Shown in pieces: positions 7,038 through 33,232 of a stretch of DNA of 64,000 nucleotides. The stretch's first letter is position 1. Every line of letters begins with the position of its first letter. Source of the stretch: Hemiscyllium ocellatum (taxonomy: Eukaryota). The stretch is from the NCBI RefSeq assembly GCF_020745735.1, contig NC_083420.1:22940001-23004000 (forward strand), given 5' to 3'. Position numbers and translations under genes: made by a program. Below the pieces are notes generated by a model, which had not been told where the DNA came from, searched no databases, and was given only the letters and a program-made list of their open reading frames with translations.

Positions 7038-7181
7038 TCATTCCACCGATATCATATCTAAATTTGCTAGATGTCTCATGGTTGGCCGCCCATGTGGGCA
7101 GTTCCAGGGATGCTCTATTTCACCCATGTGTGTAACCAATTTCTTCATCTCACTGATATGAAGCGCAGTTCCAATCATTAC
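7038..7181 (-). CDS. PMS2: PMS2 exon 15 (terminal; CPHGRP motif)
   Basis: ccag|VMIGTAL...[24 protein letters not shown]; 144 nt. Confidence 0.97.
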
Positions 7182-8041
7182 CTGGAGGTGGAAAAAAAAG
7201 TTGCACAATATAAGGCACAACAGTACTGCCTTCAACCTGCTTCAGTTTATGCCAGTTGTCCCTTCAATATCTCATTCTTCTGCTTATTCCTTTATAGAAA
7301 GCCAAAAAAATGAGTGCTGATAAGACTATTATGCTACTGGGGACATTACAGTTCATTCTGCTCCTGACCTCTTTACCTATTATGCTTTCCAAAAGAAATC
7401 ATTAAATAACAATCATAAAAAGCTTAGATAATTCATTCCTTGCCTAGTTAAAAAGAATTTAACTCCGTTGTAGCTCATCAACTGAACTAGAGCTGATCAA
7501 AGCTGAGCCATTTTGCATGGCTGAATATAATGGCATATGGCCGATGCGGTCTAATTAACTGTGAGAGTTGGGTAAAAATTTAAGGGAGACATCAATAGCT
7601 ACATGTAGCTATAAAGGCCATTCAATCAGGAAAGCACAGCCCAACATGTACAGAACTGAATTTCTGAGCATTGGGAAAGAATTTATTGGGATAAGTAGCT
7701 CTTCTAATGATTCAAAACTCTTCATAAAAAGATTTGAACTTCAAGCGTTGGTCAGATGTAACTCAAGGTTATACTGGAAGGAGTTTATTTCAGAATCCTA
7801 AGGGCCATTTTTCCATGAAATCAACAGTATTACTCTGCAGGGGAAAATAATTGCAAGGCAAAAGCTTCTATTAAGCCAAGAGGACAAATGTTATTTAATA
7901 TGGGCACAAATATAATGATGCCTTTTTCTTAGGTGCTCAATTTCTTTTAAGATTTATAAGACAATTTCATTGTCCATAATACAATAAATTAGTGATGATC
8001 ATTAAATGCACTTTGTTAGGAATGCTTTGAGGAACACTTAC

Positions 8042-8211
8042 CGACTTTCTACAAGCCCTGGAAGCAAACATCTGCCTGACTCTGGATGGTCGACACATCA
8101 CCCCAGGCATATCACTCAGCATGAAAATCAGCTCATCGATATCCTGAGGACCAAATGTCCAGTTCTTGCTCATTGGCAAGGAAACCAGCTTTACTCTATC
8201 AGTGGGAGCAG
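8042..8211 (-). CDS. PMS2: PMS2 exon 14
   Basis: [34 protein letters not shown]...FASRACRKS|gtaagt; 170 nt. Confidence 0.97.
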
Positions 8212-8344
8212 CTTTATTGAAAAACAACAAGGACAAAACAAAAAACACATTCTGTAAACAGGTATTGAACAGTTACTGACCTCAACTTAATTTTCTTCAA
8301 GAATATTTATGTCCGGTGTTTTAACTACAAGGAGATAAACCAAC

Positions 8345-8445
8345 CTTCCTCGTTTATCATAAAATCAAACCCATTCTTTCTGAATATGTCCAGGTTTTCC
8401 ATCAGTACAGTTTCATTCACTGCAGTTAAATGAAGATTCTGGGGT
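8345..8445 (-). CDS. PMS2: PMS2 exon 13
   Basis: [33 protein letters not shown]; AG/GT bounded; 101 nt. Confidence 0.95.
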
Positions 8446-8700
8446 CTAGAAGTTAAAAACAATATTTAACTATATGAATAGAGAAGAATATATTCTTTAA
8501 AAAAAGGATCAAGTCCAACTTAAATTCTACTTTCAGAATTCATCTGTACCACAGGATGACAGAAATGCTTATAGACTGTGGACAACAAAAGACATTTATG
8601 GGCAATTAACTCCACAGACTAAACTTAAATATAATGTATTCAATTATTCTGTTCACTTTTAGGTCGTAAAGTAGAATAATACAACTGAAGCCCACTAAAT

Positions 8701-8971
8701 GGGCAGCACGGTGGCACAGTGGTTAGCACTGCTGCCTTACAGTGCCAGAGACCCGGGTTCAATTCCCGCCTCAGGCGGCTGATTGTGTGGAGTTTGCACA
8801 TTCTCCTGGTGCTCCGGTTTTCTCCCACAATCCAAAAATGTGCAACTCAGGCTATGTTAGGTGCAGGGTTAAACATAGGGGAATGGGTCTGAGTGGGTGT
8901 GCTTTGGCGGGTTGGTGTAGACTTGTTGGGCTGAAGGGCCTGTTTCCACACTGTAAGTAATCTAATCTAAA
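8701..8971 (+). mobile_element. HE1-like SINE, more diverged
   Basis: GGGCAGCACGGTGGCACAGTGG head and AATCT tail. Confidence 0.88.
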
Positions 8972-9469
8972 TCCACAATCAAAAATCTGATACACTCTAC
9001 ATTCGACTACTAGGGAGACATGGTGTGTATAAGTAAAATGAGCTGGTCCCTTACTGAGAATCAGTCAGTCTTCAAGAAATTAGAAACAGGAAGAGACCAT
9101 TCACGTGAACATCAGAATTAGCAGTCAGCCACTTTGGTTTTAGTCATTCATAGGATGTGGGCATTATTGGCTGGACCAGCATTTATGACACACCCCTAGT
9201 TGTCCTTGAGCTGGCGATGTTGAGCTGACTTCTTGAACCACTGTAGTTCATTTGCTACACATAAATATACAATATCATTAGTGAAGGAGTTCCAGGATTT
9301 TGACCCAATGACAGTGAAGGAAAAGCGATATACTGCCAAGTATTGATTGATGAATAACTTCAAACAGGCAATGGAGTTCCCATGAATCTGTTGCTGTTTG
9401 TCCTTTTAGGTATTAGTGGTCATGGATTTGGAAGGTGCTGTCTAAAGGAGTCTTGGTGCAACTTATATC

Positions 9470-11385
9470 TTGGCCCCTTAAGCCTGCTATGGCATTTAAT
9501 AATGCCTGACTGGTTTACTCCACATTTACACTTTCTCCCTTGTAAGCCTTCACCTCCTTCCTTATTAAAAATCTGTCTACCTCCGTCTTAAAAACAAAGA
9601 TTCTGCTTCCACCATCCTCCTTTAAGGAAGAGCTCCAAAGGCTCATCAACCTCTGAAGTTAGTCTCAAATGGATAACTACGTACTTTAAATAGTGACTCC
9701 AGTTTTAGATTCTCCACAGGAGGAAACATCCTTTCCAATATCCACCCTGTGAAGACTCCTCAGAATAGTGCACCCTTCAATTAAGTCACCCCTTACTCTT
9801 GTAAACTCTAACCTTCAAACTTTCCTCAGAATACAACCCACCCATTTCATGTATAAGTCTTGTAAACCTTCTCTGAACTGCTTCCAATGTATTTTCATTT
9901 TTCCTTAAACAAGTGAGTATTGGTAGACACAGTACTCCAGATGTTGTCTTATCAGTGCTCTTTAAACTGAAGCTTCACAGCTACTGTATTTAATTCCCCT
10001 TGCAATAATCAATAACATTCTATTAGCTTTATTAATTATTTGCTGTACCTGCATACTTACCTTCTGCAATTCATTCATAAGGACATCAAGATCCCTCTGC
10101 ATCTGAAGATTCTGCAATTGCTCACCATATCTGAATTATGTTACTTTTTAATTTTTTTTCAGCCAAAACAGACAATTTCACATATTCCTACATTATACTC
10201 CACTCGCTAGATCTTTCCCCCATCAGTTAACCTATCGCTATCCCTCTGTAGTCTCTTTTTGTCTCCTCATAACTTACTTTGCTACCCATCTTTATGTGAC
10301 AGCTTATTTTGTAAGGTTAATTGACAAGGTTAGATCATATGGGATTGGGGTAATTTATTAGCTTGGTTAAATTACTGGCTGATGGACAGACAACAGAAAG
10401 TCAGGATAATTTTTTTTCTGGATGTGAGAAGTAACTAGTGGGGTGCCACAAGGTTTGGTCTTTGGACCCCCAATTATTTGCATTCTATATTAACAACTTG
10501 AGATACAGTGATAGAAGGCTCAATAGCCAAATTTGCAGATAACCCAAAAATAGGCGGGACGGTAAATTGCAATGAGGAATAAGAACCTTACAAATGGATA
10601 TAGATGGGTTGGGAGACTGGGTTAAATATATAGATGGAGTTTACCATTGATAAGTGTGAGGTCACACATTTTGGTTGGAAAAATGGGAAGGCGACCTATT
10701 ATCTTAACGGGAAAAACTTCAGGGTGCTCCAGTGTAGGGGGATCTGGGTTCACAAGCCACAGAAAACTAGCATGCAAGTACAGCAGAGAATAGAGAAAGC
10801 AAATGGAATGTTGGCTTTTATCGCTAAAGGAATAGTTAAGGAAGTATTGTTGCAACTATACTAGGCATTGGTGAGACCATACCTGGAGTATTGTGCACAG
10901 TTTTGGTCCCCTTGTTTGAGGAAAGATGCAGTTGCATTGGAGGCAGTTCAGAGGAGGTTCACTATATTGATCCCAGACATGAGGGGGTTTGTCGTATGAA
11001 AAAAGATTGAATAGTTTAGGCCAATACTCCTGGAATTTAGAAGAATGAGGGAGATCAAATTGACGTATTCAAGATGATAAAAGGTATAGTAAAAATAGAT
11101 ATGAAGCAGATGCTATCTCTTGCGAGACATTCTCGCGCAAGAGGTCACACTCTTCGGATAAGGGGTAGCAAATTTAAAAGAGTTGAAGATAAACAACTTC
11201 TTCCGAAGGATTGTGAATCTGTGGAATTCGCGAACCCAAGGTGTGGTAGATGCTGGGACAGTGAGTAAATTTAAGGAGGTGGATTGAAGGGTTATGGGGA
11301 GAAGGCAGGAAAATGGGGGTGAGAAGCATGTCAGCCATGATCAAATGGCAGAGCAGATTTGATGGGCAAAATGGCCTAAGTCTGC
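9470..11385. mobile_element. CR1 LINE remnants (minus 9470-10310, plus 10315-11385)
   Basis: KCEVTHFG, ANGMLAFI and [10 protein letters not shown] motifs on plus; mirror signature on minus. Confidence 0.8.
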
Positions 11386-12469
11386 ACACTTGGTCAAATA
11401 TGGCCTTCCTGTTAAGGGCAGTCACTTTCTCCACCTCTTGATTTCAGCTCTTTTTTTCCATGTTTGAACCAAGGCCATATGTATTTAGTCCTTTGTATGG
11501 AACAAATGTATTTAGTCCTTTCATCCAACTAATTTAAAACAATTATAAATGATTGATGCCTGAGCAATGTTTCCCACCTCTACACTCTATTTTCTATTAA
11601 CTAGCCAATCCTCTATCTATGCCCCCATGAGCTCTTAGTTTCTGCAATACCTTTGATGTGGTACAATTAATGCCTTCTGGAAATCCAAGTTCAATCCATC
11701 CATCCATTTGCCTTTACCCTATGAGTGTCTTATTTTCTTGAAGAATTTCAATAGATTGGTTAAAATATTTATGAAAAAGGATACTTTGTTTAGGCTTTCC
11801 ATGATGGACTCATCAGGACAATTTGCACGGATACCAATTTAAGAGGAAAACCAACCTTTACATTGTACGAGAGAGAAGAATGTTGATGGGTTGGCAAATA
11901 AACCCAGAATGGCAGAAACATTAACATGGAAAACACACCTATTAATGCTGATTAACAGTTAACAGCCAGGCTTTGATAAAATTTTAAACCAAGCAAGTTG
12001 ACTGTTTAGTCAATTAAGAAATGACAAATTAAAACAGTGTACTGTACATGCATGTTCTTTCCATTTGTAAAGAACAGGGTCCTGTGAATATAAAGCCTCC
12101 GGCACATGTAAGTATGCCACACAGCAGTCGAGACTGATAATTCAAAATTGGTTGTCAGTGTAATTCCTTACCCTTTTAGGATTATCCAGCAAATGTTATC
12201 CAGTTGCTGAATTGCATCTAATGTTAGAAACATACTGGGAGTATTGCAAGCCCAGGCTGGCTGAGAATGATCAGTGCCTTGCTTGTTACAAACAGCCAAA
12301 CAAACATGCTGTTTGATACAACCCATCAGTCTTTGGGATGTACCAAATAACACACTAGCACTGAAATTCATACACCTCATTAATCATTTGACATAATGCC
12401 AGCATTCTGCAGTTGACAAACATCACTCATGCTGCCACTGTGTAGTAGCAACATTTAAAAGACAATTAT

Positions 12470-14860
12470 TAATTCATGGGATGTGGGCTTCGCTGGTTGG
12501 GTAGCATTTTTTGCCCATTCCAAGTTGCCCTTGGAAAAAGTTGTGGTGAGCTGCTTTCCTGAACTGTTGCTGTAGATACATCCACAATGCAATTAAGCAG
12601 AGTGTTCCAGGATTTTGATTCAGCAACACAAATATATTTCCAAGTTCAAATGGTGAGTGGCTTGGAGGGGAACTTGCAGCTGGTGGTGTTCCTATGTACT
12701 TGCTTTCCTTGTCCTTCAAGATGGAAGTGGTCATAGGTTTGGAAGGTACTGTCTAAAGAACTTCAGTGAATCTCTGCAGTGAATCCTCTGGAAGATACAC
12801 ACTACTGCTACTGAATGTTGATGGTGAAAGGAATGGATGGAAAGGGAAAGTGGCTGCTTTGTCCTGAAAAGTGACAGACATCTTGAGTTTTGTTTGAGGC
12901 AAGTGAGATATATTCTATGACATGCCTGACTTATGCCTTGTAGATAGTGGATAGGCTTTAAGGAGTCGGTGAGTTATTTGCTGCAGTATCTCTTACTTTC
13001 TACTTGATCTTGTAGCTACAATATTTATAGTGGCTAGTCCAATTCAGTTTCTGGTCAATGGTAACCCTTAGGATGTTGATAGTCAGCGATTCAGTATGGT
13101 AACGACACTGAATGTTAAGAGACAATCATTAGATTCGCGTCAGAGGTAATCATAGCTTGGCATTTGTGTCGCATGAATATTACTTGCCACTTTTCAGCCC
13201 AAACCTCGATGTTGCTCAGGTCTTGCTGCATTTGGGCATAGAGTACTTCAGTATCTGAGAAGTCACAAATGGTATTGGACACTATGCAATCATTGAAAAC
13301 ATCCCCACTTCTGATCTTACCATGGAAGCAAGATTATTGATGAAATTGTTTGGCTGAAGACACTACACTGAGAAACTCCTGAAGAGATATCCTGAGAACA
13401 GAGATGCCTAACATCTAAAAACTACAATTATCTTTGTCTGTGCCAGGTATGACTCCAACCAACCAAGTGTTTTCCTCGATTCCCATCTTGCTAGAGCATC
13501 TTGATGCACACTTGGTCAAATATGGCCTTGCTGTTAAGGGCAGTCACTTTCTCCACCTCTTGAATTCAGCTCTTTTTTCCATAATTGAACCAAGGCTGTA
13601 ATGAGGTCGGGAGATGAGCGGGCCTGGTGGAACCCAAACTGGGTGATAGCCAGCAAGTTATTGCTAAGCAAGTGTTGCTTGATAGCACTGATGATTAAAT
13701 TGTCTATTACTTTACCAACAATCAAGAGTAAAGTGATGGACCGATAATTAGCCAGATTGGATTTACCCTAGGCAAATTTCCACATTGTTGGGTAGATGTC
13801 AGTGTTGTAGCTGTACTGGAACATCTTGGCTACGAGTGCTGAAGTTCTGGGGCACATCTTCAGTTATCGGAAATATTGTCAGGATATATAGCCGTTACAG
13901 TATCTAGTGCTTACAGCTATTTCTTGATATCTTCAGGAGGAATCAAATTGGCTGAAGACTGTGATGCTGGGATCTCTAGAGAAGGCAGAGATGGATTGTT
14001 GCAAATGCTTCAGCCTTATCATTCTAACTGATATGTTGGCCTCCCACTCACTGAAAATGGAGATTGTTTGTGGACCCTCCTCCATCATTGAGTTGTTTCA
14101 TTGTTGACCACCATACAGAGCTTATAGCTGATCCACTGGTAGTGGAATCACTTAGGTCTGTCAATCAATTGCTGTGTAAGCTGTTTGGCATGCAAGTAAT
14201 CCTGTTTGATACCTTCACCAGACTGACATTTCATTTTCAATTATGCCTGCACTGTTCCTGGAACGTCCACTTGCATTTTCCACTAAACCAGGTTTGATCG
14301 CTTGGCTTAACGGTACAGTGGAGGATATGCTGGACCATAATGTTGTGCTGTATTATGATTCTGCTGTGGCTCATAATGCACAACACCTTATGTATGTCTA
14401 GTCTTGAGTTATTCAACCTATTCGAAGTCTATCCTATTTACCACAGTGATACTGCCACACAACACAATATCATTTCAAAGTGAAGGAGGGGGTTTCATCT
14501 CCATCTTGGTGGTTGGAGTCAACATTGAGGACTCCCAGGGCAAGTCCTTACTGACTATACACCACTGCGCTGCCACTTCTGCTGAGTGTGGCTATCTGGT
14601 GGGACAGACATACCCAGGGATGGATGATGGTCATGTCTGGCACATTACCATTATGGGATGTTCAGTGAGTATGACTATATAAGGCTGTTGCATGACTATT
14701 CTGTGACACAGCTCTCGGAATTTTGGCACTAGCTCCTTGATGTTACATGACTTTTCAGGTCAACAGGGTTGCGTTCGCCATTGTTGTTTCTGCTGCTAGA
14801 TTGGTGCCAGGTAGTCTGTCCATTTAATTTCTTTTTTGAAACTTTCCAGCGATTGTTACA
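12470..14860 (-). mobile_element. Decayed non-LTR retrotransposon of a second CR1/Jockey-group family
   Basis: RT remnant QFGFHQARSSPDLITALVQLWKKELNSRG; related pieces at about 9140-9460, 17270-17520, 40875-41930 and 42820-43090. Confidence 0.75.
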
Positions 14861-15134
14861 CTCCTCGTCCCAATTTATGCCATCCTGTAGCCAAGTCTTT
14901 GTGATTCAGCTTCTGAAATATGTTCCACTATTCAGTGAGGTAATGGTTGATCTGTACTTCAACATTAGCCCTGTATCCTAACAAAAAGGTACTGATCACA
15001 AGCTTGTCAGCTTTCTCAGGAGAAAATTCCAACATTCCTTCCCCTCCGTGACTTAGTGAAAAGTGCATTTTAGGAAATAATAAGTAATTTCATTCAGATA
15101 ACAAAGATAACAAACAACAAATTGTAAATCTTAC

Positions 15135-15302
15135 ACTATAAGCTTCTGACTTTGAAGAACTGTGTGCTGCTGCAGCATTTCAAAGTTGTACTTCTCATCA
15201 GTGGCATGCTGGTCCACAATGAACAGGTCTGAATCCACTTTAGTGATGATAAATCCCAAATTGAACTGACCAATAATTTCCATGCTGGCAAACATATCTT
15301 TG
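15135..15302 (-). CDS. PMS2: PMS2 exon 12 (endonuclease DQHA-X2-E-X4-E motif)
   Basis: [19 protein letters not shown]...[12 protein letters not shown]...QKLI; 168 nt. Confidence 0.97.
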
Positions 15303-15524
15303 CTGCAAACAGTACAAAACAAGATCAATAAATACAAGGCTAATGCAAAATACTTCAGAGAAGAAAATGTGCCATTACATCTATCACTAAATAAACTTCA
15401 TGCAAGATAAAGCAGAGCTCCAATACCCAATAACAGATGGTTGGCGATAGGTCACAAATATCTACACCGTTTCTAAGAAAACAATTGCTAATGCATCAGA
15501 TTTTACTTAAACTTTATATTGAAG

Positions 15525-15846
15525 AGATTAGACTAGATTAGATTAGATTCCCTACAGTGTGGAAACAGGCCCTTCGGCCCAACCAGTCCACACCAACCCT
15601 ATCCAGACCCAATTCCCTCTGCCTAATGCACCAACACGATGGGCAATTTAGTACAGCCAATTCACCTAATCTGCACAGCTTTGGACTGTGGGAGGAAACC
15701 GGAGCACCCGGAGGAAACCCACGCAGACACGGGGAGAATGTGCAAACTCCACACAGACAGTCACCCGAGGCTAGAATTGAACCTGGGACAGCCTAGAATT
15801 CAACCTAGAATTGAAACTGTGAGGCAGCAGTGCTAACCACTGAGCA
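15525..15846 (-). mobile_element. HE1-like SINE of a different subfamily
   Basis: (ATTAG)n tail and V-domain; different middle segment; short CCTAGAATT repeats near the B-box. Confidence 0.88.
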
Positions 15847-15894
15847 CAATATACCGTTAGTTTAAATTAGTCTGGCATAGAGTATTGGTAGCTG

Positions 15895-16214
15895 ATTAGA
15901 TTAGATTAGATTAGACTTACAGTGTGGAAACAGGCCCTTCGGCCCAACAAGTCCACACCGACCCGCCGAAGCGAAACCCACCCATACCCCTACATTTACC
16001 CCTTACCTAACACTACGGGCAATTTAGCATGGCCAATTCACCTGACCCGCACATCTTTGGACTGTGGGAGGAAACCGGAGCACCCGGAGGAAACCCACGC
16101 AGACACGGGGAGAACGTGCAAACTCCACACAGTCAGTCACCTGAGTCGGGAACTGAACCCGGGTCTCAGGTGCTGTGAGGCAGCAGTGCTAACCACTGTG
16201 CCACCGTGCCGCCC
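15895..16214 (-). mobile_element. HE1-like SINE, young copy
   Basis: Nearly identical to 2343-2655 and 37247-37566. Confidence 0.92.
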
Positions 16215-17536
16215 ATAAAAGGAGTGCTGACACTCCTTTATTCACCAACAATGCACTGCTCTATTTGCAGAGCTGCACATCAGATATGATGTTAAACTGA
16301 AATCCTGTTTGCTTTTCATGTGGTCTATAAAATTGATGAGATGGTGGAGTTTATCATGTACCAATGATTAATGGACAAAAGCACTTTCTTCATCATAGCT
16401 TGTTTAAAAGTAAGGTGCCACATCAAGATCATTGTAGAAAATTAAAGCTTACGGTATAGGGAGTAGCATAGTGGCATGGCGAGAGGATTAGCTGACTAAC
16501 AGGATGCAGACCATAGGTGTGAATGGGTCTTTTTTAGGTTGGCAAGATGTAACAAGTGGTATGCCATGGAGATCAGTTATGGGTTCAACTGTTCACAATG
16601 ACCTGCTAGATTTTCTGGCAACACAAAGGTAGCTAGATAAGTAATTTGTGAACAGGACACAAGGAGGATACAAAAATCATTAGTTAATTAAGTGGGAAAA
16701 TGGGAGAATTACATGGAAAAATGTGAAATTGCCCATTTTGACAGGAAGAAGAAAGAACCATTTTCTAAATCTTGTGAGATTACAGAGCTCTGAGATATAG
16801 AGAGATCTGAGTGTTCTCACGCATTAAGCCACAAGATTAATATTAAGCTACCTTTTAATTTGAGGGGAACGGAGTTTATATTTCAAGCTATAAGGGTATT
16901 GACGAGACATCATCTGGAAAGATGTCAATGTGTTGACAGGTTTACTAAACTAAAAATTTACACTGACCATTAATTGTGCACAGCAACATAATTAGAAATT
17001 GTGTGTTATAAAATAGATAATTGCAGTCATAACACTTAGAATGAGGGAAGGCCATTTGAACTCTCTTAACCTTGCTTTTTGTATGGTCTCCATACATATA
17101 AGCTCTTGTGGACTTTGCTGGGATAAAGTTTATATACATATTATTTGATATTTACAATTAATCTAGTAATGTTCAAGTGCAATAAAAAGCTAGTAATCAT
17201 AATGATCCCACTGAACAGAGCATCAGGCTTGAAAGCAAGAATGGTCTACCATGCTCCTAACTCATTTAAATAATGTGGTCTTGAATTGTTTACTATTGTG
17301 CTTTAGGGAAGAAAATCGGCTGTCCTTACCTAGTCAGGTCTACGTGTGATTCCAGATCTTTAGCAATATTGTTGACTCTTAACATGAAATAGCCTATTAA
17401 GCCATTGAGTTTTGTAATCAAGGCAGCAGTTCACCACCATCTTTGTAAAGGCAAATAGGAATGGGTAATAAATACTGGCCTTGACATTAAGCAACAGATT
17501 CGGTGAATAGATTTTTAAAAATGACAATTTAATTAC

Positions 17537-18419
17537 CTTATCTCTTTTCTGAGTTCAGCCTCTGCTGCTTGATTGTCTCCAGGTCTAATTTGGGCTCGAA
17601 ATCGCCTGCGCCTCTGGGCCTCTTTTTGAAGTGCTTGCTGTTCATGGACTAACTTCATTCTTAAAGCAAGAAGGGCCATAGAGAAAGGGAGTATCGCAAT
17701 CTTTTTATTCATTTCTACTGGTATATCAATCTCTGAAGTCTGAAATAATCCAGGTCCTGAAGGCAAGCTATCATCCAACCACAAGCCACCAACCTTCCTG
17801 CGTTTTTCACCCTGGATGACATAACCATGTGAGCAAGAATCTGCCAATAGTTGGCTGCAATTTTCCGCTGAAGCTGACTTCTCTGTTCGCTCACTAATGT
17901 TAGGCACCAAAACTTCACAGCCAATCATTTCAGTTTTCAGTTCTTCCCCTCCTTTCCCAGCTTCGGAAAACTTATGGAGCATGTTCGACAAGCTAACAGC
18001 ATTATCAGAGCCACCAGTGGATTTCGACATGGCGTTAATCTCTAGTGTGTTGTAATCACATTCTGATGATTGTATAGTGCAACCTTTTGCAGAATCTGTA
18101 CCACTTTCAGAGTTCATGGAGTTCTGCTCCATTTGTTTGGGATTTCCAGATACTGGCATGTGGTCAGTCCTACAATCAGGCTGAGGGCTACTCAGTTTAC
18201 AACTGGTAAAAAAATTGTGCAGTTTTCTTTGCACTGGAAAGTCCTGTTGTTTATTAGACTTGGGCCCACATAATGATGACCTGTGTAGGGAGTATGCTTC
18301 ACGCAACCTGGCAACGCCTACATACTTCTCCTTATCTGAATACGATTGCACGGGTGATTGCTGCTTAAGTGGAACAGATGACTTCGGACTGACAGCCATA
18401 GGAACATTTTCAGAGAATC
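17537..18419 (-). CDS. PMS2: PMS2 exon 11 (long, divergent linker)
   Basis: 883 nt open frame with LREAYSL and RFRAQIRPGDNQAAEAELRKEI; ttttag acceptor, AG|gtaatt donor; phases fit neighbouring exons. Confidence 0.93.
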
Positions 18420-19845
18420 CTAAAACAGGGAACACAACTTAATATTTAAAAATAAAAAATGATCTATTACAATATTGCACAATATGCACTGTTATAGAAG
18501 TTTTAAAAATGCTTTCCTGCTTTATTAGTGTTACTAATCTGGTTGTATTTGTTGCCCCTTCTTCATTAGCCAGGACATTAAAAGCCAGGACAAGCAGAAA
18601 CTGCAGTCATTCTTGAACCAAAGTAAGTGGGATGGGTTACTGCAGCTTTACTTCCCTGAAGGACATTGATTTTGTTTTCAAAGTGTAGTTCATTAATGTT
18701 CTAGCAACTTTTTGTGATGATTTTTCTGGTGTCTGCTCATGAATATTCAGATTGGCAGAATTCTATTTCACAACTTGCCATCATGGGATATGAACTCATG
18801 ACTTTTAGGTTCTGAATTTAGTGCCAAAGGCACAATGCTACAACTGAAAGAAATTTTACGTTAAAATTTTTGTTTGATGAGAAGCCAGACTAAATCTTGT
18901 TTAGCAATTGAAGTGCTGCAGAATTATTTACAAGTCTGAATTAATGTTTTGCTTTTATATTTGTGAATATAGCCATAATTTGTGTATGCCAGAGATGTGA
19001 GAGTAGCATTGTCTTTGAAATAATTCAACTCCAATTAGGTGCAATTTGAAACACTCAAAATGACAGCGCCTTCACCAAGTGTAATGTATACTTTCAAATA
19101 TTGCATCATTCCATTTCTAATTCTCAAAGTACTCATTACACAACCAAAAAAAAACTTCAAACCATTCATTTTAGATCTCATAAGCCTAAAAATGATGGCT
19201 TTTGATTTTATTGAATAAATACTTATCAACTTCCTACCCCACTCATGAGTCACACAACTTTGAACTGTTAATCAAAAGGAAATAATGCAGGCATTCTCTT
19301 CATTGTCGCTAGGCCCAAATTCTGGGAGTCTCCCTCTAAAAGCACTGTGAGCAGTATTATCACCACAGGAATTACCATAGTTCAAGAAGGTGGTTCACCA
19401 AAATCTTCTTGTAGGCAATTAGAGGCATGCAATAACACCACAAATGTACAAAGAGAACTGCAACAGAGGATTTCAATATAAACATTTCAAGTGACCTTTT
19501 GCTACTCCGATAAACAAGTTTTCATAGGGGTTTTTTATAATTTATATCAGAATGATCTGCTTGAAGTATAGTTCACATTTAGCCACATCTTAATTTACAA
19601 TGTAATGCAACTTTTACCTATATTAATCTACAGTATACACAATCAAACATCATTAAATATCTATACTATAGGTATTTCATTTAAAGAGACTTTAATAGAA
19701 GATTTATTCCTACTATAAGTTTTTTGATCCATCATGTTCTACACACTGGAACTAAAAGACAGCAATTATAGAATATCTTAGGTTCAGGTTTCACACACAT
19801 CAATGCTTTTCTATTGAGAAGGATGGACATTGTGATGTTCTTTAC

Positions 19846-19998
19846 CTGGCTTCTGTGGAAACGTCTCATTAACATCGAGCTTGTTAACATTAGAATCATA
19901 CATCTGAATAAGGGAGGTCTTCAGGATTGCAAGAAGCAGTTTTTCTTCTTGAAGAAGAATTTGTCTTTTGTCTGGTGTAACATTGAGGTCAACAGACT
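19846..19998 (-). CDS. PMS2: PMS2 exon 10
   Basis: [29 protein letters not shown]; 153 nt. Confidence 0.95.
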
Positions 19999-20229
19999 CT
20001 AAAAATGGCAAAGCACATCTAGTAAATGAAGATAGCTGCAATTATTAGGAAGGTACATCATATCTTGGCTGCATAAATCATCAGAATAGAAGTCCATTAC
20101 GATAATCAATGCATAATTTCCTCTTTTTTTCATTTTAAATAAACTATTTAGTGCATTAGCTCATAATGTTTTCTGGCTTAGTTATTCACAAATACAATAG
20201 CTGAAACATACATCTTGACTCTAACTTAC

Positions 20230-20314
20230 CAGAATTAACACAGATATTAAGGGCAACAAATGGATACTGATGCTTGTTGTACATGTGATAGACTTCATTT
20301 ACAAGTTTGGAAAC
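20230..20314 (-). CDS. PMS2: PMS2 exon 9
   Basis: [28 protein letters not shown]; 85 nt; gtaagt donor. Confidence 0.95.
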
Positions 20315-20384
20315 CTAAAGATAATGTTAAATCATTTTAGTCATCAAATACACAAACCACAATGTTAAATAAATATATCTACCA

Positions 20385-21035
20385 AGTCATAGAATCATAG
20401 AGGTCGACAGCATGGAAAAGGCCCTTTGGCTCATTGAGTCTGTACTGGTCAAAAACAACCAATGAACTATTTTAATCCTATTTTCCAGCACTTTGCCCAC
20501 AGCCTAGTATGTCTAGGCATTGCAAGTGCACATCTAAATACTTCTTAAATGGATTTCTGCCCCAACACCCTTACAGATAACAAGTTATAGATTCCCACCA
20601 TCTTCTGAGTGAAAATATTTTTCCTCACATTCCATTTAAACTTCCTGCCCCTTAGCTTAAATCTATGCCCCCGGTCACTGATCCCTTCACCCAAGAGAAA
20701 AAGACTCTTCCCGACTACCATGTCTGTTTCCCTCATAATTTTGTATATCTTAATTACGTCCCTCTCATTCTGCTCGAAGGAAAATATCCCAGTCTATCCA
20801 ATTTCTCTTCATAACTAAGACTGTCCAGCCAGGCAACATTCTGGTAAATCTCCTCGGCACCCTCTCCCATGCAATCACATTCCTCCTATAATGTGGATTC
20901 CAGAATTATACACAATACCCTAGCTGTGGCAAAGCAATGTTCTATACAGTTCCAGCCTAATCTGTCTGCTGAAACTCTATATCTCAGCCAATAAAGGTTA
21001 AGTACCCAATGCTTCTTAACCACTTTATCTACCTT
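20385..21035 (-). mobile_element. Decayed CR1 3' end
   Basis: RGHRFKLRG...NIFTQKMVGIYN remnant; (CATAGAAT) tail. Confidence 0.75.
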
Positions 21036-21464
21036 TAGTGAGATCTTATTTTACTTCTCCATTCTTTCCAATTTGTCAATTATTTCATATTTTCGGATCC
21101 TTCAAGACCAGTAATCATTTTTAGATGATGTTACACAACAAGTCAGTATGCACTTTGCCAAGAGAAATATGATAATGTGTGGAATGACAACCATGAGTTT
21201 GTCTATTTACTTCCTACACAAAGGTTTATCGGCTTTCAAAGGTCCCAGAAAAGTCACAAATTGAACGCTAGAAAACATCATCATGATCACAGACCAACCA
21301 CAAAGAACCACTGTCACAAGTGAGATCAGAATCTAATAAAAAATCAAAAGCACAAACTATAATCGGGGACTGAATGCATTGATGGATCACTATGTTATGA
21401 AAAATATATGTGAACTATAACTCCACAATCACAAAACTAGGTTGTCAGGCCACCTAAAGCCATT

Positions 21465-21975
21465 GGAATCAAAAAGTGTGGAGTTGAGAAAGCACAGCTG
21501 GTCAGGAAGCATCTGAGGAGCTCTTCATCAGGAATGGAAAGGGAGGGGGTTGCCCAAGGGCGCTGAGATAAATGGGAAGGGTGTGGGGCTGAGGGGAAGG
21601 TAGTTGAAAACTCGCTGGATAGATGAAGGTGTGGGGGTGATGGTGAAAGTTCGGGGAGGAGGGTGGAGCGGATAGGTGGGAAGGGAGGTGGACAGGTAGG
21701 ACAGTTCAACAGGCCAGTGCCGAGTTAGGAGGTTGGATCTAGGATAAGGTGGGGGCAGGGGAGATGAGGAAACTGGTGAAATCACCATTGATCCCATGTG
21801 ATTGGAGGGTCCCAAAGTGGAAGATAAGGCGTTCTTCCTTCAGGCGTCAGATGGCTAGAATTTGGTGGCGGAGGAGGCCAGGACTTGATTGTTCTTAGTG
21901 GAGTGGGAGAGGGATTGAAGTGTTCTGCCACAGGGTGGTGGAGTTGTTTAGTGCATGTGTTCCAGAGCTATTCAA
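21465..21975 (-). mobile_element. Penelope-like element family A fragment
   Basis: Same family as 25208-25968, 52615-53430 and 56175-57420. Confidence 0.7.
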
Positions 21976-22073
21976 TGAAACCTAAATCAATTGGGATAGT
22001 ATGCATGTCAACAGAGTTGTCAGTAGTTGCTATAATTTAATTTTTCACAGTTTGCATTGCTATTGCTCTTTAC

Positions 22074-22173
22074 CTTCAATGGGTCACATGGTCGTTGATT
22101 GATAAAGAAAAACTGTCGATCAGTTGAACTCCTCCCAACACCATGATTACTACGAGACACGAACCCTGTGATT
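22074..22173 (-). CDS. PMS2: PMS2 exon 8
   Basis: [33 protein letters not shown]; 100 nt. Confidence 0.95.
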
Positions 22174-22289
22174 CTTCAGTGTACCGCAGAAAGGAAAGTT
22201 ACTGTTATTGTACATAAAATATTATTCGTTAGTATAAGCTGTCAGGTCAGCAGAATAGCTGTGTCCCTTTATAGTACTCCCTCTTGGCA

Positions 22290-23360
22290 GTTGTTGTTTG
22301 TATTGTTATCCTTACCCAGAAAAGAATATTCTAGCCACACAGGGATGCAATGAATGTTCACCAGTCTGATACCTGGGATTGTGGAATTCCTCTTGAGAAC
22401 AGACTGTGGGGATTGAATTTGTATTCTTTAGCGTTTGATGAATGAAAGATGGTCTAATTGAAATAATCAAAAATCTTCCATGGCTCAACTAAATAGATGC
22501 AGGGAGGATATTACTTCTGGTTGGAGGAGTCCAGAACCAGGAGAGACAGTCTCAGAATAAGCGATCAGTTATGTGGAAATGAAAGGAGAAGGGATTTATT
22601 TGCTCAAAGTGGTGTATCTTTGGAATTCTGGAACCCAGGCGCTATGTTGGCTCAGTTATTGATTATGTTCAACATAGAAATCAATAGATAGTTAGACATT
22701 AAAACATCCAATAATATAACAAACATACTGGCATTTTTTGAGAATGTAACAAGTAGAGAATGATTGGGGGAACCAGTGATGTGGTCTACTTGGATTTCTA
22801 AAAACATTCAATAAAAATCTTACATAAGAGATTAGCATCTAAAATTAAAGCACATTGAGGCAGTGAACTAACATAGAGCATTTGCTGGCAGATAGGAAAC
22901 AAAGAGTAGAAATAAACTGGTCATTTTCTGATTGCAGTCAGTGAATAAGTGAGGTACTACAGGTATAATTTTTTGGAGCCCCAGCTACTCACAAATTATA
23001 TTAGCAATTTCAATGAGGGAGTCAAATATAATATCTCCAAGTTTGAAGAAATATAAAGCTGGGTGAGAGATTGAACTGTGAGGTGGATGCAGATGCTTTA
23101 GTGCGATTTAGATAAGTTGAGTGAGGAGTAAATGCATGGTTTATTAAATATAAGGTGGATAAATGTGAGGTTATCCATTTTAGTAGCAAAAATAGGAAGG
23201 CGGATTATTCGTGGAAAGATGGGGAAGAGGAAAGTGCATTGAGATCTGAGCACCTTTGAATATTAGTCACTGAAAGTATGCATATAGGAGCAGCTGGTGA
23301 TGAAAGTGGCAAATGTTGGCCTTCGTAGCAAGAGGGATGAGCATAGGAACAGAGATGTGC
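22290..23360 (+). mobile_element. Decayed CR1 fragments
   Basis: GATGTGGTCTACTTGGATTT and KCEVIHF-like remnants. Confidence 0.7.
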
Positions 23361-23448
23361 TGTGCAAAACCTGCGTCCACACCAATCCCCTCACCTCTGT
23401 CCAAGGCCCCAAGGGATCCTTCCACATCTATCAGAAATTTACCTGTAC

Positions 23449-25207
23449 TGAGTTTTGAGAAGATTTGTAACTCAGGTTGAGGTTCTGGATGTAGGGTTGC
23501 TCGCTGAGCTGGAAGGTTCATTTTGGACATTTCATCACCATACTAAGTAACTTCTTCAGTAAGCCTCTGAATGAAGCACTGGTGGTGTAGCTCGCTTTCT
23601 ATTTGTATGTTTGAGTTTCCTAGGCTTGGTGACATCATTTCCTGTGGTGACATCATTTCCTGTATCCAAAATTCACAAATCAGGAGCCCCCCCCCCCACC
23701 CCTCCCTCAGACCCACAGTCTCGCTACCTGGAACACCAACTTTCAGATTGGCCAAGTAGCTACACTAAAGACGAAAATACTGAGTAGAAGACTCACGGCA
23801 CTCCATCCACTCTACCCTAGAATTCCTGAAGACCATCAAAAACACCAAGATAGAAGAGGATGAAATAATGGTCACAAGTCTTGTTCATCACATCCATCAA
23901 CATCAACCTGGCCAAGGAAACACTGACTACATTATTAGAAGAACCAAAGACACATACACCAAACACCACCAAATTCATCAGCAAGGACAGTATCGTCAAG
24001 CTAGTGGACCTATGCCTTACCACCCACTTCACCTTCAACAACAAAACCTACAGATAAAGCAACACCCATGGGATCTCCAATATCAGGGTTCTTAGCAGAG
24101 GCAGTAATGCAAAGACTTGGACAAACAGGTCTGCCAACCATCCAACTCAAACTTTGTGTCCGCTACATGGATGACACCTTTGCCATCACTAAACAAAATA
24201 AATTAGAGGAAACCTTCAAGATCACCAATAATAACCTTACTGGCATAAGATTCACTAAAGAGGAGGAAACAACAACAAACTGCCATGCCTAGATGTCACA
24301 GTAGAGCGAACAGCCAATGGAGGACTTCAAACCAGCGTCTACAGAAAAACAACACACATGGACTAAATATTGAACTATAGAAGCAATCACCCCAACATCC
24401 ACAAACAAAGCTGCATTAGAACAGTATTTCAATGAGCCACCACACACTGCTGCACAAAGGAACTACGCAGAGCAGAGGAAAATCACCTATGCAGTAAATT
24501 AAAAAAGAACGGGTACCCAATGAACACAGTCCGCCGATTTCTGAACAAACCCAAACAAGCAAAACATGACCAGAAACCCTAGCCGCTCTCCCCTACATCA
24601 AAGACATCTCGGAAATGACTGCCAGACTACTCAGACCCCTTGGCATCATGGTAGCCCACCAACACACTATAACAGCAGCTAATTAACTTGAAAAATCCTA
24701 TACAGACAACAAGCAAAACTAACGTCATTTACAAAAACTCATTTGCAAGAACTGTAACAAACACTACATTGGACAAACAAGCATAAAACTAGTCACCAGG
24801 ATATATGAACATCTACTAGCCACAAAACGACATGACCCACTCTCATTAGTACCCTTACATATGGATGAGGAAGGACACCACTTTGACTGGGATAACACAT
24901 CCATTTTGGACATGCCAAACAGAGACACGCACGAGAATTCCTAGAAGCATGGCATTCCAACTGGACCTCTATCAACAAATACATTGGCTTGGATCCCATT
25001 TACCACACCCTCAGAAAACGAACAGGAAATGACATCACCATAAGAAATGATGTCACCACAAGAAATGAGTCCACCAACCCCAGGAAACTCAAACAAGGCG
25101 GGCTACATCACCAGTGCTGCTTTCAAAGGCTTATTGAAGTTGTTACCTAGTATGGTGACGAAATGTCTGAAAATGAACTTTCCAGCTCAGCGAGCAAACC
25201 TACATCC
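23449..25207 (+). mobile_element. Penelope-like retroelement family C (RT + GIY-YIG remnants) with an inverted 5' terminal repeat
   Basis: MGSPISGFLAEAVM...RYMDDTF RT motifs; NVIYK..CKNCNKHYIGQT nuclease remnant; about 23486-23672 inverted to about 25022-25207; 12-bp flanking duplication ATTTACCTGTAC. Confidence 0.85.
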
Positions 25208-25968
25208 ATTTACCTGTACCTCTACCAATGTCATCTGCTGCATTCATTGCACCCCGTGTGGTCTCCTCTACATCAGGGAGACAGGATGCCTTCTTGCGGA
25301 TCCTTTCAAAGAACATCTCTGGGACACCCACACCCACCAACCCCACCGCCCCATGGCTGAACACTTCAATTCCCCCTCCCACTCCGTCAAGGACATGCAG
25401 TTCCTGGGCCTCCACCGCCAAACAATTACTACCCGATGCCTGGAGGAGGAATGCCTCATATTCCTCCTTGGGACCCTGCAACCACATGGGATAAATGTGG
25501 ATCTCAACAACTTCCTCATTTCCCCTCCCCCCACATTATTCCACTCCCAAGTCTCCAACTGGGCACCACCCTCCAGACCCATCCATCACTCCCTTTCTGA
25601 CCTATCACCCTCTCCCTCACTTTCATCCACCTATTGCTTTCCCAGCTACCTTTCCTCAACCCCACCTCCTCCAATTCATCTGAGCCCCATCCCACAAGCC
25701 TGATTCCTGACCTGTCTATCACTCCCCTTTCTGACCTATCACCCTCTCCCTCACTTTCATCCACCTATCGCTTTCCCAACTACCTGTCCCCAACCCCAGC
25801 CCCTCCAATTCATCTCTGAGCACCATCCCACAAGCCTGATTCCTGATGAGGAGCTTATGCCTGAAACATCGATTCTCTTGATCCTTGGATGCTGACTGAT
25901 ATACTCTCCTTTTCCAGCACTACACTCTCGACTCTGAACTCCAGCATCTGCAGTCCTCATTTTCTCCC
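25208..25968 (+). mobile_element. Penelope-like family A 3' part; its 5' part lies at about 23365-23448
   Basis: FTCTSTNVICCIHCTPCGLLYIRETG...LGTLQPHGIN GIY-YIG remnant followed by a terminal repeat. Confidence 0.8.
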
Positions 25969-26030
25969 TGTGTTGTCACAATTATATCTATAATGTAACT
26001 CCATTTATTAACCTATTAATCATAACTGAC

Positions 26031-26128
26031 CTGTAGAGCTTTACAGGAATGTCAGTAGAATTAATTCCATAATCTTCACAAATTGCCTCACTTGGGCTTT
26101 GTTGAACAAAAGGAATAACATTCTGTAA
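26031..26128 (-). CDS. PMS2: PMS2 exon 7
   Basis: LQNVIPFVQQSPSEAICEDYG; 98 nt; ccag/gtcagt boundaries. Confidence 0.92.
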
Positions 26129-26524
26129 CTGGAAAGCACAGAAAACAAATGCTACATTAAATCATTTGGAACAGAAACGTATAATTTGTCTCATCATACT
26201 TCTTTGAAAGTACGAACCAGTCAGACCTATAATCCTACTTTTCATTCATTTGAATGTCTTTGAAAGTTGTTACCAAATTTGCTTCCACTGTCCTTTTAAA
26301 TAGGACATTCCAGATTACCACAATGCACTTCTCTATTTTAATCCTGGGTACATAGCAATGCCTAAAAAGCTATTAATGTGACAAGAAGCTCTGACATTTT
26401 TAATATATGTAAATAATCGCATGGGTGGTAACATTCGGCTTTCACAACAGTAAATTACTAGTAGAGGCATAAAATTACTAAGTGTTTGTAAAATTTCATT
26501 CCAACTTATTTATGTTTATAATAG

Positions 26525-33030: not shown

Positions 33031-33232
33031 TGATACAGGCAACCATGCTCTGCCATGTGAGTACTCCCTCATACTTTAATATGAGGCATTTACACCAAGA
33101 TCCCTCATGCCAGTTGAGTGAATATTTAAGGATCCCAAGGCATTATTCAAAGAGTAGGGAGCTTTGCTGATGTACTTGGGATCCTTAAATATTCAACTTC
33201 TGCACTGGGCAGATGCAATATGAATATTTTAC

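What the first reader, a model, noticed from the sequence alone, without database searches (positions are those of the whole stretch)
18208..18231. Canonical PIP-box-like motif QRKLHNFF in the PMS2 disordered linker
The exon 11 translation contains Q-x-x-L-x-x-F-F, the textbook PCNA-interacting peptide, shortly after the conserved LREAYSL motif in otherwise poorly conserved linker. The described human PMS2 PCNA motif is the non-canonical QRLIAP in the endonuclease domain, and its counterpart QKLIVP is also present here across exons 12/13. As I recall it, the human linker has no FF-type box at this place. This PMS2 may therefore have a second, stronger PCNA (or Rev1/MLH1-type FF motif) tether. 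That is inference.
Basis: partly seen in the sequence, partly recalled or inferred. Interest (0 to 1): 0.7.

Follow-up and report, generated by a model that had tools for sequence, protein, structure and literature searches.

The report
Ancestral PIP box in PMS2 linker
The shark mismatch-repair protein PMS2 carries a textbook PCNA-docking motif (QRKLHNFF) in its floppy linker; the same motif sits at the same spot in cartilaginous fishes, ray-finned fishes, the coelacanth, amphibians and a lizard, but has decayed in mammals, birds, a crocodile and turtles, so the model organisms used to study this repair step may lack an ancestral clamp tether.

Summary
Window 18208-18231 (minus strand) encodes QRKLHNFF inside exon 11 (17537-18419) of PMS2. 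The exon translation is 293/293 identical to Hemiscyllium ocellatum PMS2.

The motif is not a chance match. At the homologous place, Q-[KR]-x-L-x-x-F-[FL] is present in:
- 15/15 chondrichthyan sequences
- 2/2 sturgeon and paddlefish sequences
- 119/121 teleost sequences
- the coelacanth
- 31/34 amphibian sequences, Xenopus tropicalis included
- one lizard

It is absent or decayed in 102 bird, 4 mammal, 3 turtle and 1 crocodile sequences.

In a 31-taxon alignment, the first 225 residues of the exon-11 stretch have only five invariant columns. Three of them are PIP positions 1, 4 and 7. The surrounding sequence is predicted to be disordered, with a one-turn helix over the motif. The flanks carry net positive charge. 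The Q and L codons vary synonymously between species.

This pattern fits a canonical PCNA-interacting peptide. It does not fit an MLH1-, MSH2- or REV1-binding FF motif, or a PIP degron.

No paper in the held library describes the motif. The only described PMS2-PCNA contact is the QRLIAP-type site in the endonuclease domain, present here as QKLIVP.

Verdict: a real, ancient and apparently undescribed PIP box, and a new member of a known kind.

The parts
18208..18231 (-). PIP-box motif QRKLHNFF (PMS2 residues 440-447 of P0032)
   Evidence: Translation. Strict match to Qxx[LIMV]xx[FY][FY]. Q, L and the first F are invariant in the 31-taxon alignment A1 and near-invariant in 154 unique orthologous 28-mers.
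17537..18419 (-). PMS2 exon 11. It encodes most of the disordered linker and the start of the C-terminal domain.
   Evidence: Splice sites read. 293/293 identity to P0032 residues 378-670. No Pfam domain. AlphaFold2 gives 163/293 residues with pLDDT below 50.
18286..18306 (-). LREAYSL anchor, the most conserved island of the linker, 18 residues upstream of the motif
   Evidence: L38 and S43 are invariant in A1. Best 8-mer conservation window in the linker. AlphaFold2 helix at exon residues 35-43. Retained also in birds and mammals.
18160..18279 (-). 40-residue peptide (SSLCGPKSNKQQDFPV-QRKLHNFF-TSCKLSSPQPDCRTDH) with positively charged flanks. This is the unit to test for PCNA binding.
   Evidence: Translation. 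The net charge of orthologous 28-mers averages +3.5, range +1 to +6.
15135..15148 (-). First part of the known-type CTD clamp motif QKLIVP (QKLI plus two bases of the V codon), at the end of exon 12
   Evidence: Pfam MutL_C hits the exon 12 translation. The motif type Qx(hydrophobic)[L/I]xP is described in PMC8495741.
8442..8445 (-). Second part of QKLIVP (last base of the V codon plus the P codon), at the start of exon 13
7041..39529 (-). PMS2 gene body as far as mapped (exons 2-15 of 15)
   Evidence: tblastn of P0032 against the window. Approximate exon positions: 39529-39392, 38007-37897, 35367-35269, 34686-34444, 33409-33227, 26158-25997, 22175-22071, 20314-20219, 19999-19844, 18419-17537, 15304-15135, 8445-8343, 8236-8021, 7181-7041. 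Only the exon 11 boundaries, the exon 12 end and the exon 13 start were checked at the splice-site level.

Best explanation
QRKLHNFF is a functional, canonical PCNA-interacting peptide (PIP box) embedded in the intrinsically disordered linker of PMS2.

Proposed mechanism (inferred):
- The Q inserts into the Q-pocket of a PCNA subunit.
- L and the two aromatics, on a one-turn helix, fill the hydrophobic pocket under the interdomain connecting loop.
- The basic flanks add electrostatic affinity.
- Because the motif sits on a long flexible arm about 280 residues upstream of the endonuclease-domain contact (QKLIVP), it would act as a tether. It would keep MutL-alpha (MLH1-PMS2) on DNA-loaded PCNA and raise the local concentration of the weak, orientation-defining CTD-PCNA contact that licenses strand-specific nicking. 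This is analogous to the N-terminal PIP arms of MSH6 and MSH3.

Shown here: the motif exists, is positionally conserved since the last common ancestor of jawed vertebrates, is constrained at exactly the PIP-defining positions, lies in predicted disorder, and is present in spliced mRNAs of orthologues.

Inferred: that PCNA is the partner, and that the role is tethering.

The motif has eroded at least twice among amniotes: in mammals, and in the turtle, crocodilian and bird lineage.
For: 1. Sequence. Strict canonical PIP box. The teleost form QKTLQSFF differs by one residue from the UNG2 PIP QKTLYSFF and by two from the MSH6 PIP QSTLYSFF. Both are measured PCNA binders, with Kd 34 and 3 uM (PMC6881253).

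2. Distribution. Qxx[LM]xx[FY][FYL] at the homologous site:
- Chondrichthyes 15/15 (FF in orectolobiform, lamniform and carcharhiniform sharks and the chimaera; FL in Heterodontus, Heptranchias, Pristiophorus, rays and skates)
- Acipenseriformes 2/2
- teleosts 119/121 (the two exceptions are isoform or gene-model artefacts)
- Latimeria
- amphibians 31/34, including Xenopus tropicalis QRKLVSFF
- the lizard Elgaria

3. Pattern of constraint. In the 31-taxon alignment A1, the only invariant columns in the first 225 residues of the exon-11 stretch are L38 and S43 (the LREAYSL anchor) and Q63, L66 and F69 (PIP positions 1, 4 and 7). Among 154 unique 28-mers, position 1 is Q in 154; position 4 is L in 152 and M in 2; position 7 is F in 152 and Y in 2; position 8 is F in 138 and L in 16. 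That set was selected with Q..[LIMV]..[FY][LIMVFYW], so it adds information only within the allowed residue classes. It is the second most conserved 8-mer island in the linker.

4. Context. AlphaFold2 with this alignment predicts disorder (mean pLDDT 54.5), with a short helix at residues 67-71, HNFFT. Bound PIP peptides adopt such a turn. Flank net charge averages +3.5, which PMC6881253 links to PCNA affinity.

5. Selection acts on the protein. Q is CAA or CAG, and L is CTG, CTT or CTA, across shark, skate, sturgeon, frog, salamander and teleost. The linker overall evolves fast (dN/dS 0.29-0.46, dS 0.6-1.4 among three chondrichthyans).

6. Expression in orthologues. Full-length uninterrupted ORFs carrying the motif lie in roughly 3-kb contigs from skate, sturgeon, frog, salamander and teleost runs. 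These can only be spliced mRNAs.

7. Biology. MutL-alpha nicking is already known to depend on PCNA (PMC13644597; PMC13123911).
Against:
- Mammals, birds and yeast carry out PCNA-dependent MutL-alpha activation without such a linker motif, so it cannot be essential for the core mechanism.
- FF-containing PIP-like motifs can overlap RIR and MIP specificities (PMC6881253 citing its ref. 30).
- Half of the chondrichthyan sequences have L, not an aromatic, at position 8, which usually lowers affinity. Even so, 43% of verified PCNA motifs lack one aromatic.
- Sampling is limited to the top-120 lists of three searches. There is no lamprey, hagfish or lungfish, no named zebrafish, salmon or eel, only one named squamate, and only one invertebrate (Limulus, no motif).
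- RNA evidence for this shark itself could not be obtained.
Confidence: 0.68

Rival explanations
1. It is a conserved FF-type short linear motif for a partner other than PCNA. Candidates are the S2 site of the MLH1 C-terminal domain (MIP-like, possibly in cis within the heterodimer and competing with EXO1), MSH2 (SHIP-like) or the REV1 C-terminal domain (RIR-like).
For: PMS2 is the obligate partner of MLH1, and FF motifs mediate MLH1 and MSH2 contacts in EXO1, Rad5 and others (PMC9243396; PMC13644597). PIP, RIR and MIP motifs are reported to overlap (PMC6881253).
Against: - The published examples read here are MIP EERKRFF (Rad5) and SHIP NKESFLF. The usual MIP consensus [RK]-S-[RKH]-[FY]-F is from my own knowledge and was not read here. 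In PMS2 the residue before the first F is S, C, T or A, and a basic residue only rarely. The residue before that is mostly Q or H.
- There is no aromatic two residues after the first F, as a SHIP box would have.
- The residues that are invariant here, Q1 and L4, are irrelevant to MIP, SHIP and RIR but define a PIP box.
- The second aromatic, needed by MIP and RIR, is L in 16 of 154 forms.
- G or P often follows within four residues (FFKGP, FFNVSP). By my own knowledge of RIR motifs this disfavours the helix they need.
Confidence: 0.14
2. It is a PIP degron. PCNA-bound PMS2 would be presented to CRL4-Cdt2 and degraded in S phase or after damage.
For: Sharks have a basic residue at +4 (FFTSCK), one of the two degron-specific features (PMC6881253).
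Against: The T-D pair at positions 5-6 is absent everywhere (HN, QS, HS and so on). The +4 position is V, P, G or A in most bony vertebrates, where the conserved K is at +5.
Confidence: 0.04
3. The conservation reflects something other than partner docking. Possibilities are an intramolecular contact of the linker with the PMS2 or MLH1 domains, or a nucleotide-level constraint such as an exonic splicing element.
For: AlphaFold-based work predicts that other linker segments of MLH1 and PMS2 dock back on the MLH1 CTD (PMC10325900). F7 is TTT in all eight DNA sequences examined.
Against: Synonymous variation at the Q and L codons and at neighbouring codons argues against a nucleotide-level constraint. 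The residue pattern is exactly that of a known docking motif. In isolation AlphaFold2 gives only moderate confidence here (block means 62 for exon residues 61-70 and 52 for 71-80, below the 70 usually taken as confident) and no packing.
Confidence: 0.09
4. A chance PIP-like string without function.
For: 0.7% of shuffled exon-11 peptides contain a strict match. Disordered linkers generate such strings.
Against: Retention at the homologous site across lineages that, by general knowledge, have been separated for more than 400 million years, within a linker with 39% mean column identity and dN/dS of 0.3-0.5.
Confidence: 0.02

Closest known systems
N-terminal PIP boxes of MSH6 (QSTLYSFF) and MSH3 in MutS-alpha and MutS-beta
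   Same: A canonical Qxx(L)xxFF motif in a mismatch-repair protein, on a long disordered arm, tethering the complex to PCNA (PMC6881253; PMC4942255). Near-identical residues: the teleost PMS2 form QKTLQSFF and the amphibian form QRKLQSFF.
   Different: The MSH6 and MSH3 motifs are at the extreme N-terminus of a MutS homologue and are retained in mammals and yeast. This one is internal, between the ATPase and endonuclease domains of a MutL homologue, and is missing in mammals and birds.
UNG2 PIP box (QKTLYSFF)
   Same: Differs from the commonest teleost PMS2 motif by one residue. A measured PCNA binder, Kd 34 uM (PMC6881253).
   Different: An unrelated protein (uracil-DNA glycosylase) with the motif at the N-terminus.
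PMS2/Pms1 endonuclease-domain PCNA motif (human QRLIAP, yeast QKLIIP; bacterial MutL QEMIVP for the beta clamp)
   Same: Same protein and same presumed partner. Present in this shark as QKLIVP. Required for MutL-alpha-PCNA interaction and endonuclease activation (PMC13123911; PMC8495741).
   Different: A different motif class, Qx(hydrophobic)[L/I]xP, with no aromatics. It lies on the folded CTD next to the active site and is conserved from bacteria to man. The linker motif is a classical aromatic PIP box about 280 residues upstream in disorder and is lineage-restricted.
Animal EXO1 C-terminal PIP box, alongside its MIP and SHIP boxes
   Same: A mismatch-repair nuclease with a PIP box in a disordered region that is present only in some lineages ('in animals'; PMC13644597).
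   Different: A different protein. The EXO1 tail combines PIP with MLH1- and MSH2-binding boxes, and no such boxes were recognised next to the PMS2 motif.
MLH1 linker 'ConMot' and PMS2 'P-motif'
   Same: Conserved short motifs within MutL-alpha linkers otherwise regarded as spacers (PMC10325900).
   Different: ConMot is needed for endonuclease function and is predicted to dock on the MLH1 CTD. It is conserved across eukaryotes and is not a PIP box. The P-motif is the helix at the C-terminal end of the PMS2 linker (here exon residues about 247-275), not the site studied.

Membership tests
Canonical PIP box (PCNA-interacting peptide) | Sequence Q-x-x-[L/M/I/V]-x-x-[F/Y]-[F/Y] | tested here: met
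   QRKLHNFF. Definition from PMC6881253.
Canonical PIP box (PCNA-interacting peptide) | Located in an accessible, intrinsically disordered region | tested here: met
   AlphaFold2 on a 31-sequence alignment gives 163/293 residues with pLDDT below 50. Apart from the helices over the last ~50 residues of the exon, there are only short helices at the LREAYSL anchor and at HNFFT. No Pfam domain. This is a prediction, not a measurement.
Canonical PIP box (PCNA-interacting peptide) | Key positions 1, 4, 7 and 8 are selectively conserved among orthologues relative to the flanks | tested here: met
   Q63, L66 and F69 are three of the five invariant columns in the first 225 residues of the exon-11 stretch. 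Logo counts. Position 8 is F or L.
Canonical PIP box (PCNA-interacting peptide) | Positively charged flanks (supportive, modulates affinity) | tested here: met
   Net charge of the 28-mers averages +3.5, range +1 to +6. Rationale in PMC6881253.
Canonical PIP box (PCNA-interacting peptide) | Direct binding to the PCNA hydrophobic pocket and interdomain connecting loop, lost on mutating Q or FF | not testable with these tools
   Complex prediction with an archaeal PCNA surrogate was not folded.
PIP degron (CRL4-Cdt2) | T-D at positions 5-6 plus a basic residue at +4 | tested here: not met
   Positions 5-6 are HN here and mostly QS elsewhere. +4 is K in sharks but V, P, G or A in most bony vertebrates. 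Definition.
MIP box (MLH1-interacting peptide) | Basic residue(s) immediately before [FY]-F, typically [RK]-S-[RKH]-[FY]-F | tested here: not met
   The residue before F7 is S (109), C (15), T (11) or A (10) of 154, and K or R in only 5. The residue before that is Q (124) or H (11). Published example EERKRFF. The consensus itself is from my own knowledge.
SHIP box (MSH2-interacting peptide) | S-[FY]-x-[FY]-type spacing, as in NKESFLF | tested here: not met
   The aromatics are adjacent (FF or FL), and the residue two after F7 is K, N, T or S. Only one published example was read, so this test is coarse.
RIR (REV1-interacting region) | FF followed by a helix-compatible stretch; upstream residues are unimportant | tested here: inconclusive
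   Position 8 is L in 16/154 forms, G or P is common within +2 to +4, and the constraint lies upstream on Q1 and L4. All of this speaks against RIR, but the RIR definition is from my memory, not from a source read here.
MutL CTD clamp-binding motif Qx(hydrophobic)[L/I]xP | The motif lies in the endonuclease domain at the position of human QRLIAP | tested here: met
   QKLIVP at P0032 residues 723-728, split between exons 12 and 13. This is a separate site, not the finding itself. It shows that the shark has both.

The most novel reading that the evidence does not exclude
The ancestral jawed-vertebrate MutL-alpha was a two-point PCNA client. A high-affinity canonical PIP box on the PMS2 linker held the complex on replication-associated PCNA, while the weak QxLIxP site on the endonuclease domain set strand polarity.

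Mammals, and separately the turtle, crocodilian and bird lineage, lost the tether. On this reading the mechanism worked out in human and yeast systems is a derived, tether-less state. Fishes, amphibians and squamates may recruit and activate MutL-alpha differently, for example partly independently of MutS, or with different kinetics of strand memory.
Probability: 0.45. Interest if true: 0.75.

Novelty: new member of a known kind. Interest (0 to 1): 0.6.

Why it matters
How PCNA finds, orients and activates the MutL-alpha endonuclease is the step that gives eukaryotic mismatch repair its strand specificity. It has been studied almost only in human and yeast proteins, whose single known contact is weak and has been hard to capture.

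A natural, canonical PIP box in PMS2 of Xenopus, fishes and sharks would give:
- a ready experimental handle. FF-to-AA add-back in Xenopus egg extracts, where gap-directed repair and PCNA retention are already assayed, or knock-ins in fish.
- a possible aid to trapping MutL-alpha-PCNA complexes for structural work.
- a case of lineage-specific rewiring of short docking motifs in a cancer-relevant repair pathway.

It also cautions against transferring PMS2 linker variant interpretation and mechanism across vertebrate classes.

Tried and rejected
- Complex prediction with the 40-residue shark peptide and an archaeal PCNA (PCNA_PYRFU) as a surrogate clamp was NOT FOLDED, because the tool does not pair a eukaryotic chain with a microbial one. 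The job was counted. There is no verdict either way.
- A PDB sequence search with the peptide and with a 24-column motif profile gave nothing meaningful. The motif is too short for HMM statistics.
- Pfam finds nothing in exon 11, as expected for a linker.
- The look-up of encoding contigs for the unnamed fragments P0015 (motif decayed) and P0009 (QRKLQTFF) returned only SRA run ids and no organism, so these stay unassigned.
The codon comparison therefore rests on eight sequences, and the 16-codon dN/dS around the motif is too short to interpret.
- Table 2 of PMC6881253 (83 verified motifs) is not held as text, so no PIP position-specific scoring matrix could be built.
- MIP, SHIP, RIR, PIP-degron and chance readings were considered and rejected. 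The reasons are under Rival explanations and Membership tests.
- Literature searches for six variants of the motif string, for PMS2 + PIP-box + Xenopus + MutL, and for PMS2 + PIP box + zebrafish found no description of this motif. Subscription-only papers are not covered.

Full report
**Observation.** The minus strand of window 18208-18231 reads CAA AGA AAA CTG CAC AAT TTT TTT, which translates to QRKLHNFF. It lies in a 300-codon ORF. The true exon limits are a ttttag|GA acceptor (first exon base 18419) and an AAG|gtaatt donor (last exon base 17537). The exon translation (293 aa) is 293/293 identical to residues 378-670 of the NCBI protein 'mismatch repair endonuclease PMS2 isoform X2 [Hemiscyllium ocellatum]' (P0032). 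tblastn places 14 of that protein's 15 exons on the minus strand between 7041 and 39529. The window is therefore the epaulette shark PMS2 locus, and the exon is the large linker exon 11. A strict Qxx[LIMV]xx[FY][FY] turns up in 0.7% of shuffles of this peptide. Taken alone, the match would be only mildly unusual.

**Conservation.** A search of the 50%-identity protein library with the exon returned one full-length shark PMS2 and many single-exon fragments. Several of these carried Q-[KR]-x-L-x-[ST]-F-F at the same distance after the LRE[AS][FY]SL anchor. Three searches with full-length PMS2 from Heptranchias, medaka and the frog Ascaphus gave named orthologues (cluster names). At the homologous site the results were as follows.

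- Chondrichthyes: 15/15 sequences.
  - QRKLHNFF in Hemiscyllium, Chiloscyllium and Stegostoma
  - QRKLHKFF in Scyliorhinus and Mustelus
  - QRTLQKFF in Carcharodon
  - QRKLQSFF in the chimaera Callorhinchus
  - FL endings in Heterodontus, Heptranchias, Pristiophorus, Mobula, Hemitrygon, Pristis and skates
- Sturgeon and paddlefish: 2/2 (QKKLH[SC]FF).
- Teleosts: 119/121, mostly QKTLQSFF. The two exceptions are an isoform lacking the region and a gene-model artefact reading SKTLQSFF.
- Coelacanth: QRKLLSFF.
- Amphibians: 31/34 strict.
  - These include Xenopus tropicalis (QRKLVSFF), salamanders (QRTLQSFF) and caecilians (QRKLQSFF).
  - The exceptions are Ascaphus (PRTLKSFF) and the frogs Rana and Mantella, with a one-residue insertion (QRTLQSFNF).
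- The lizard Elgaria: QRKLLTFF.

In contrast, none of 102 bird, 3 turtle, 1 crocodile or 4 mammal sequences has it. The aligned block shows the motif decaying in place:
- turtles: KRKLTSFL, KRKPVSFL
- crocodile: HRYLSDL
- palaeognath birds: RQLPSFD
- neognath birds: RQMSLD
- echidna: QRKL-SFSS
- wombat and koala: QRNLWSFC
- rhinoceros: QKRSGPFR

Given the accepted vertebrate tree, the motif was present in the common ancestor of jawed vertebrates and of amniotes. It eroded at least twice: in mammals, and in turtles plus archosaurs. The one invertebrate seen, Limulus, has no such motif. The origin before jawed vertebrates is open.

**Pattern of constraint.** In a 31-taxon alignment from sharks to the lizard (A1), mean column identity is 39%. 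The only invariant columns in the first 225 residues of the exon-11 stretch are L38 and S43 of the anchor and Q63, L66 and F69, which are PIP positions 1, 4 and 7. Over 154 unique 28-mers:
- position 1 is Q in all
- position 4 is L in 152 and M in 2
- position 7 is F in 152 and Y in 2
- position 8 is F in 138 and L in 16
- position 2 is K or R in 149
- flank net charge averages +3.5

These 28-mers were picked with a pattern requiring Q, [LIMV] and [FY] at positions 1, 4 and 7. The counts at those positions therefore add only the near-exclusive use of L and F within the allowed classes. A sliding-window scan ranks the motif as the second most conserved island of the linker, after the anchor. 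The Q and L codons vary synonymously across eight DNA sequences. The linker as a whole evolves quickly (dN/dS 0.29-0.46, with dS 0.6-1.4 among three chondrichthyans). The constraint is therefore on the protein. AlphaFold2 with this alignment predicts disorder (mean pLDDT 54.5, with 163/293 residues below 50). It places short helices only at the anchor and at residues 67-71 (HNFFT), plus the helices that lead into the C-terminal domain. A single helical turn over the hydrophobic residues is what bound PIP peptides adopt (PMC6881253). Full-length ORFs with the motif lie in roughly 3-kb contigs from skate, sturgeon, frog, salamander and teleost runs. These can only be spliced mRNAs.

**Interpretation.** The canonical PIP box is Qxx(L/M/I/V)xx(F/Y)(F/Y), found in disordered regions, with basic flanks raising affinity (PMC6881253). 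All sequence-level criteria are met. The teleost form differs by one residue from the UNG2 PIP (QKTLYSFF, Kd 34 uM) and by two from the MSH6 PIP (QSTLYSFF, Kd 3 uM). The FL variants are within the range of verified PCNA ligands, 43% of which lack one aromatic.

The alternatives fit worse:
- MIP boxes need basic residues directly before the aromatics (EERKRFF). Here that place is S, C, T or A.
- SHIP boxes have spaced aromatics (SFLF).
- RIR and MIP motifs do not use the upstream Q and L, which are invariant here.
- A PIP degron needs T-D at positions 5-6 and a basic residue at +4. T-D is absent everywhere, and +4 is basic only in sharks.

I therefore read the motif as a PCNA tether on the PMS2 linker. 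It would act with the known weak Qx(hydrophobic)[L/I]xP contact on the endonuclease domain, much as the MSH6 PIP arm acts for MutS-alpha (PMC4942255). The binding itself and the tether role are inferences.

**Comparison with the literature.** Papers that discuss MutL-alpha-PCNA contacts name only the endonuclease-domain motif (QRLIAP or QKLIIP): PMC6393296, PMC13123911, PMC8495741, PMC10325900 and a 2026 review, PMC13644597. No paper in the library contains any of six variants of the linker motif string. No paper links PMS2 with a PIP box in Xenopus or zebrafish. Subscription-only literature is not covered. Within these limits the motif appears undescribed, plausibly because human, mouse, chicken and yeast proteins lack it.

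**Verdict.** The feature is real and ancient. It is best explained as a canonical PIP box: a new member of a known motif class in a protein already known to work with PCNA. Confidence that it is a selected functional short linear motif is about 0.95. Confidence that its partner is PCNA is about 0.68. Interest is moderate to high, because the motif is present in Xenopus and fish models, where it can be tested directly, and because its repeated loss in amniotes questions how general the mammalian picture of MutL-alpha activation is.

**Caveats.**
- Counts are of 90%-identity cluster representatives from top-120 lists, not of species.
- Several clades are missing or thin: cyclostomes, lungfish, non-acanthomorph teleosts by name, squamates (n=1) and mammals (n=4).
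- Unnamed fragments hint at further variation: QKKMQSFF, QKKMFSFV, and a reptile-like fragment with a decayed site.

Noticed in passing
window 18208-18214: The two F codons plus the preceding AAT form a T7 mononucleotide run in the coding strand (A7 on the + strand). This is a slippage-prone tract inside a mismatch-repair gene, at the motif itself. F7 is TTT in all eight species' DNA examined.
   Followed up: partly
window 18082-18111 (-), exon-11 residues 103-112 (SESGTDSAKG): This is the third conserved island of the linker. Most vertebrates have D-S-G-x-G-S-T-S here (consensus SESDTDSGKGS, S109 nearly invariant). From my own knowledge this resembles a DSGxxS phosphodegron. This shark has A in place of the G. 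Function unknown to me.
   Followed up: no
window 18286-18306 (-), LREAYSL: This is the most conserved element of the PMS2 linker. It is kept even in birds and mammals that lost the PIP box, and is predicted helical. No function was found in the papers read.
   Followed up: partly
window 2363-2704 (+), 3146-3589 (-), 15922-16218 (+), 37274-37609 (+), and partial copies near 8640-8830, 15557-15836 and 27654-27956: A repeated element of roughly 300 nt is scattered in both orientations through PMS2 introns and downstream of the gene. It shows up as near-identical spurious ORFs (MWKQALRPNKSTPTRRS...GRKPEHPEETHADTGRTCKLHT...). It looks like a SINE-like family.
   Followed up: no
window ~28200-30600 (-): A run of long minus-strand ORFs in PMS2 intron 6 (144, 184, 137, 93 and 123 aa). 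Read by eye, with no domain search, they look like endonuclease and reverse-transcriptase parts of a LINE.
   Followed up: no
Nothing was laid, and no letters of these places were sent to any tool afterwards.
   Followed up: no
P0322 (Rana temporaria), P0327 (Mantella), P0151 (Ascaphus): These are the exceptions among frogs. The frogs Rana and Mantella have a one-residue insertion that splits the aromatics (QRTLQSFNF). Ascaphus has P in place of Q (PRTLKSFF). They are natural variants useful as binding controls.
   Followed up: partly
P0042 (Pan troglodytes, 1402 aa, 'uncharacterized protein LOC751032'): A chimpanzee protein model matched only about 20% of the PMS2 queries at 72-74% identity, with unrelated Pfam domains. 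It is probably one of the primate PMS2-derived partial duplicates fused into another gene model.
   Followed up: no
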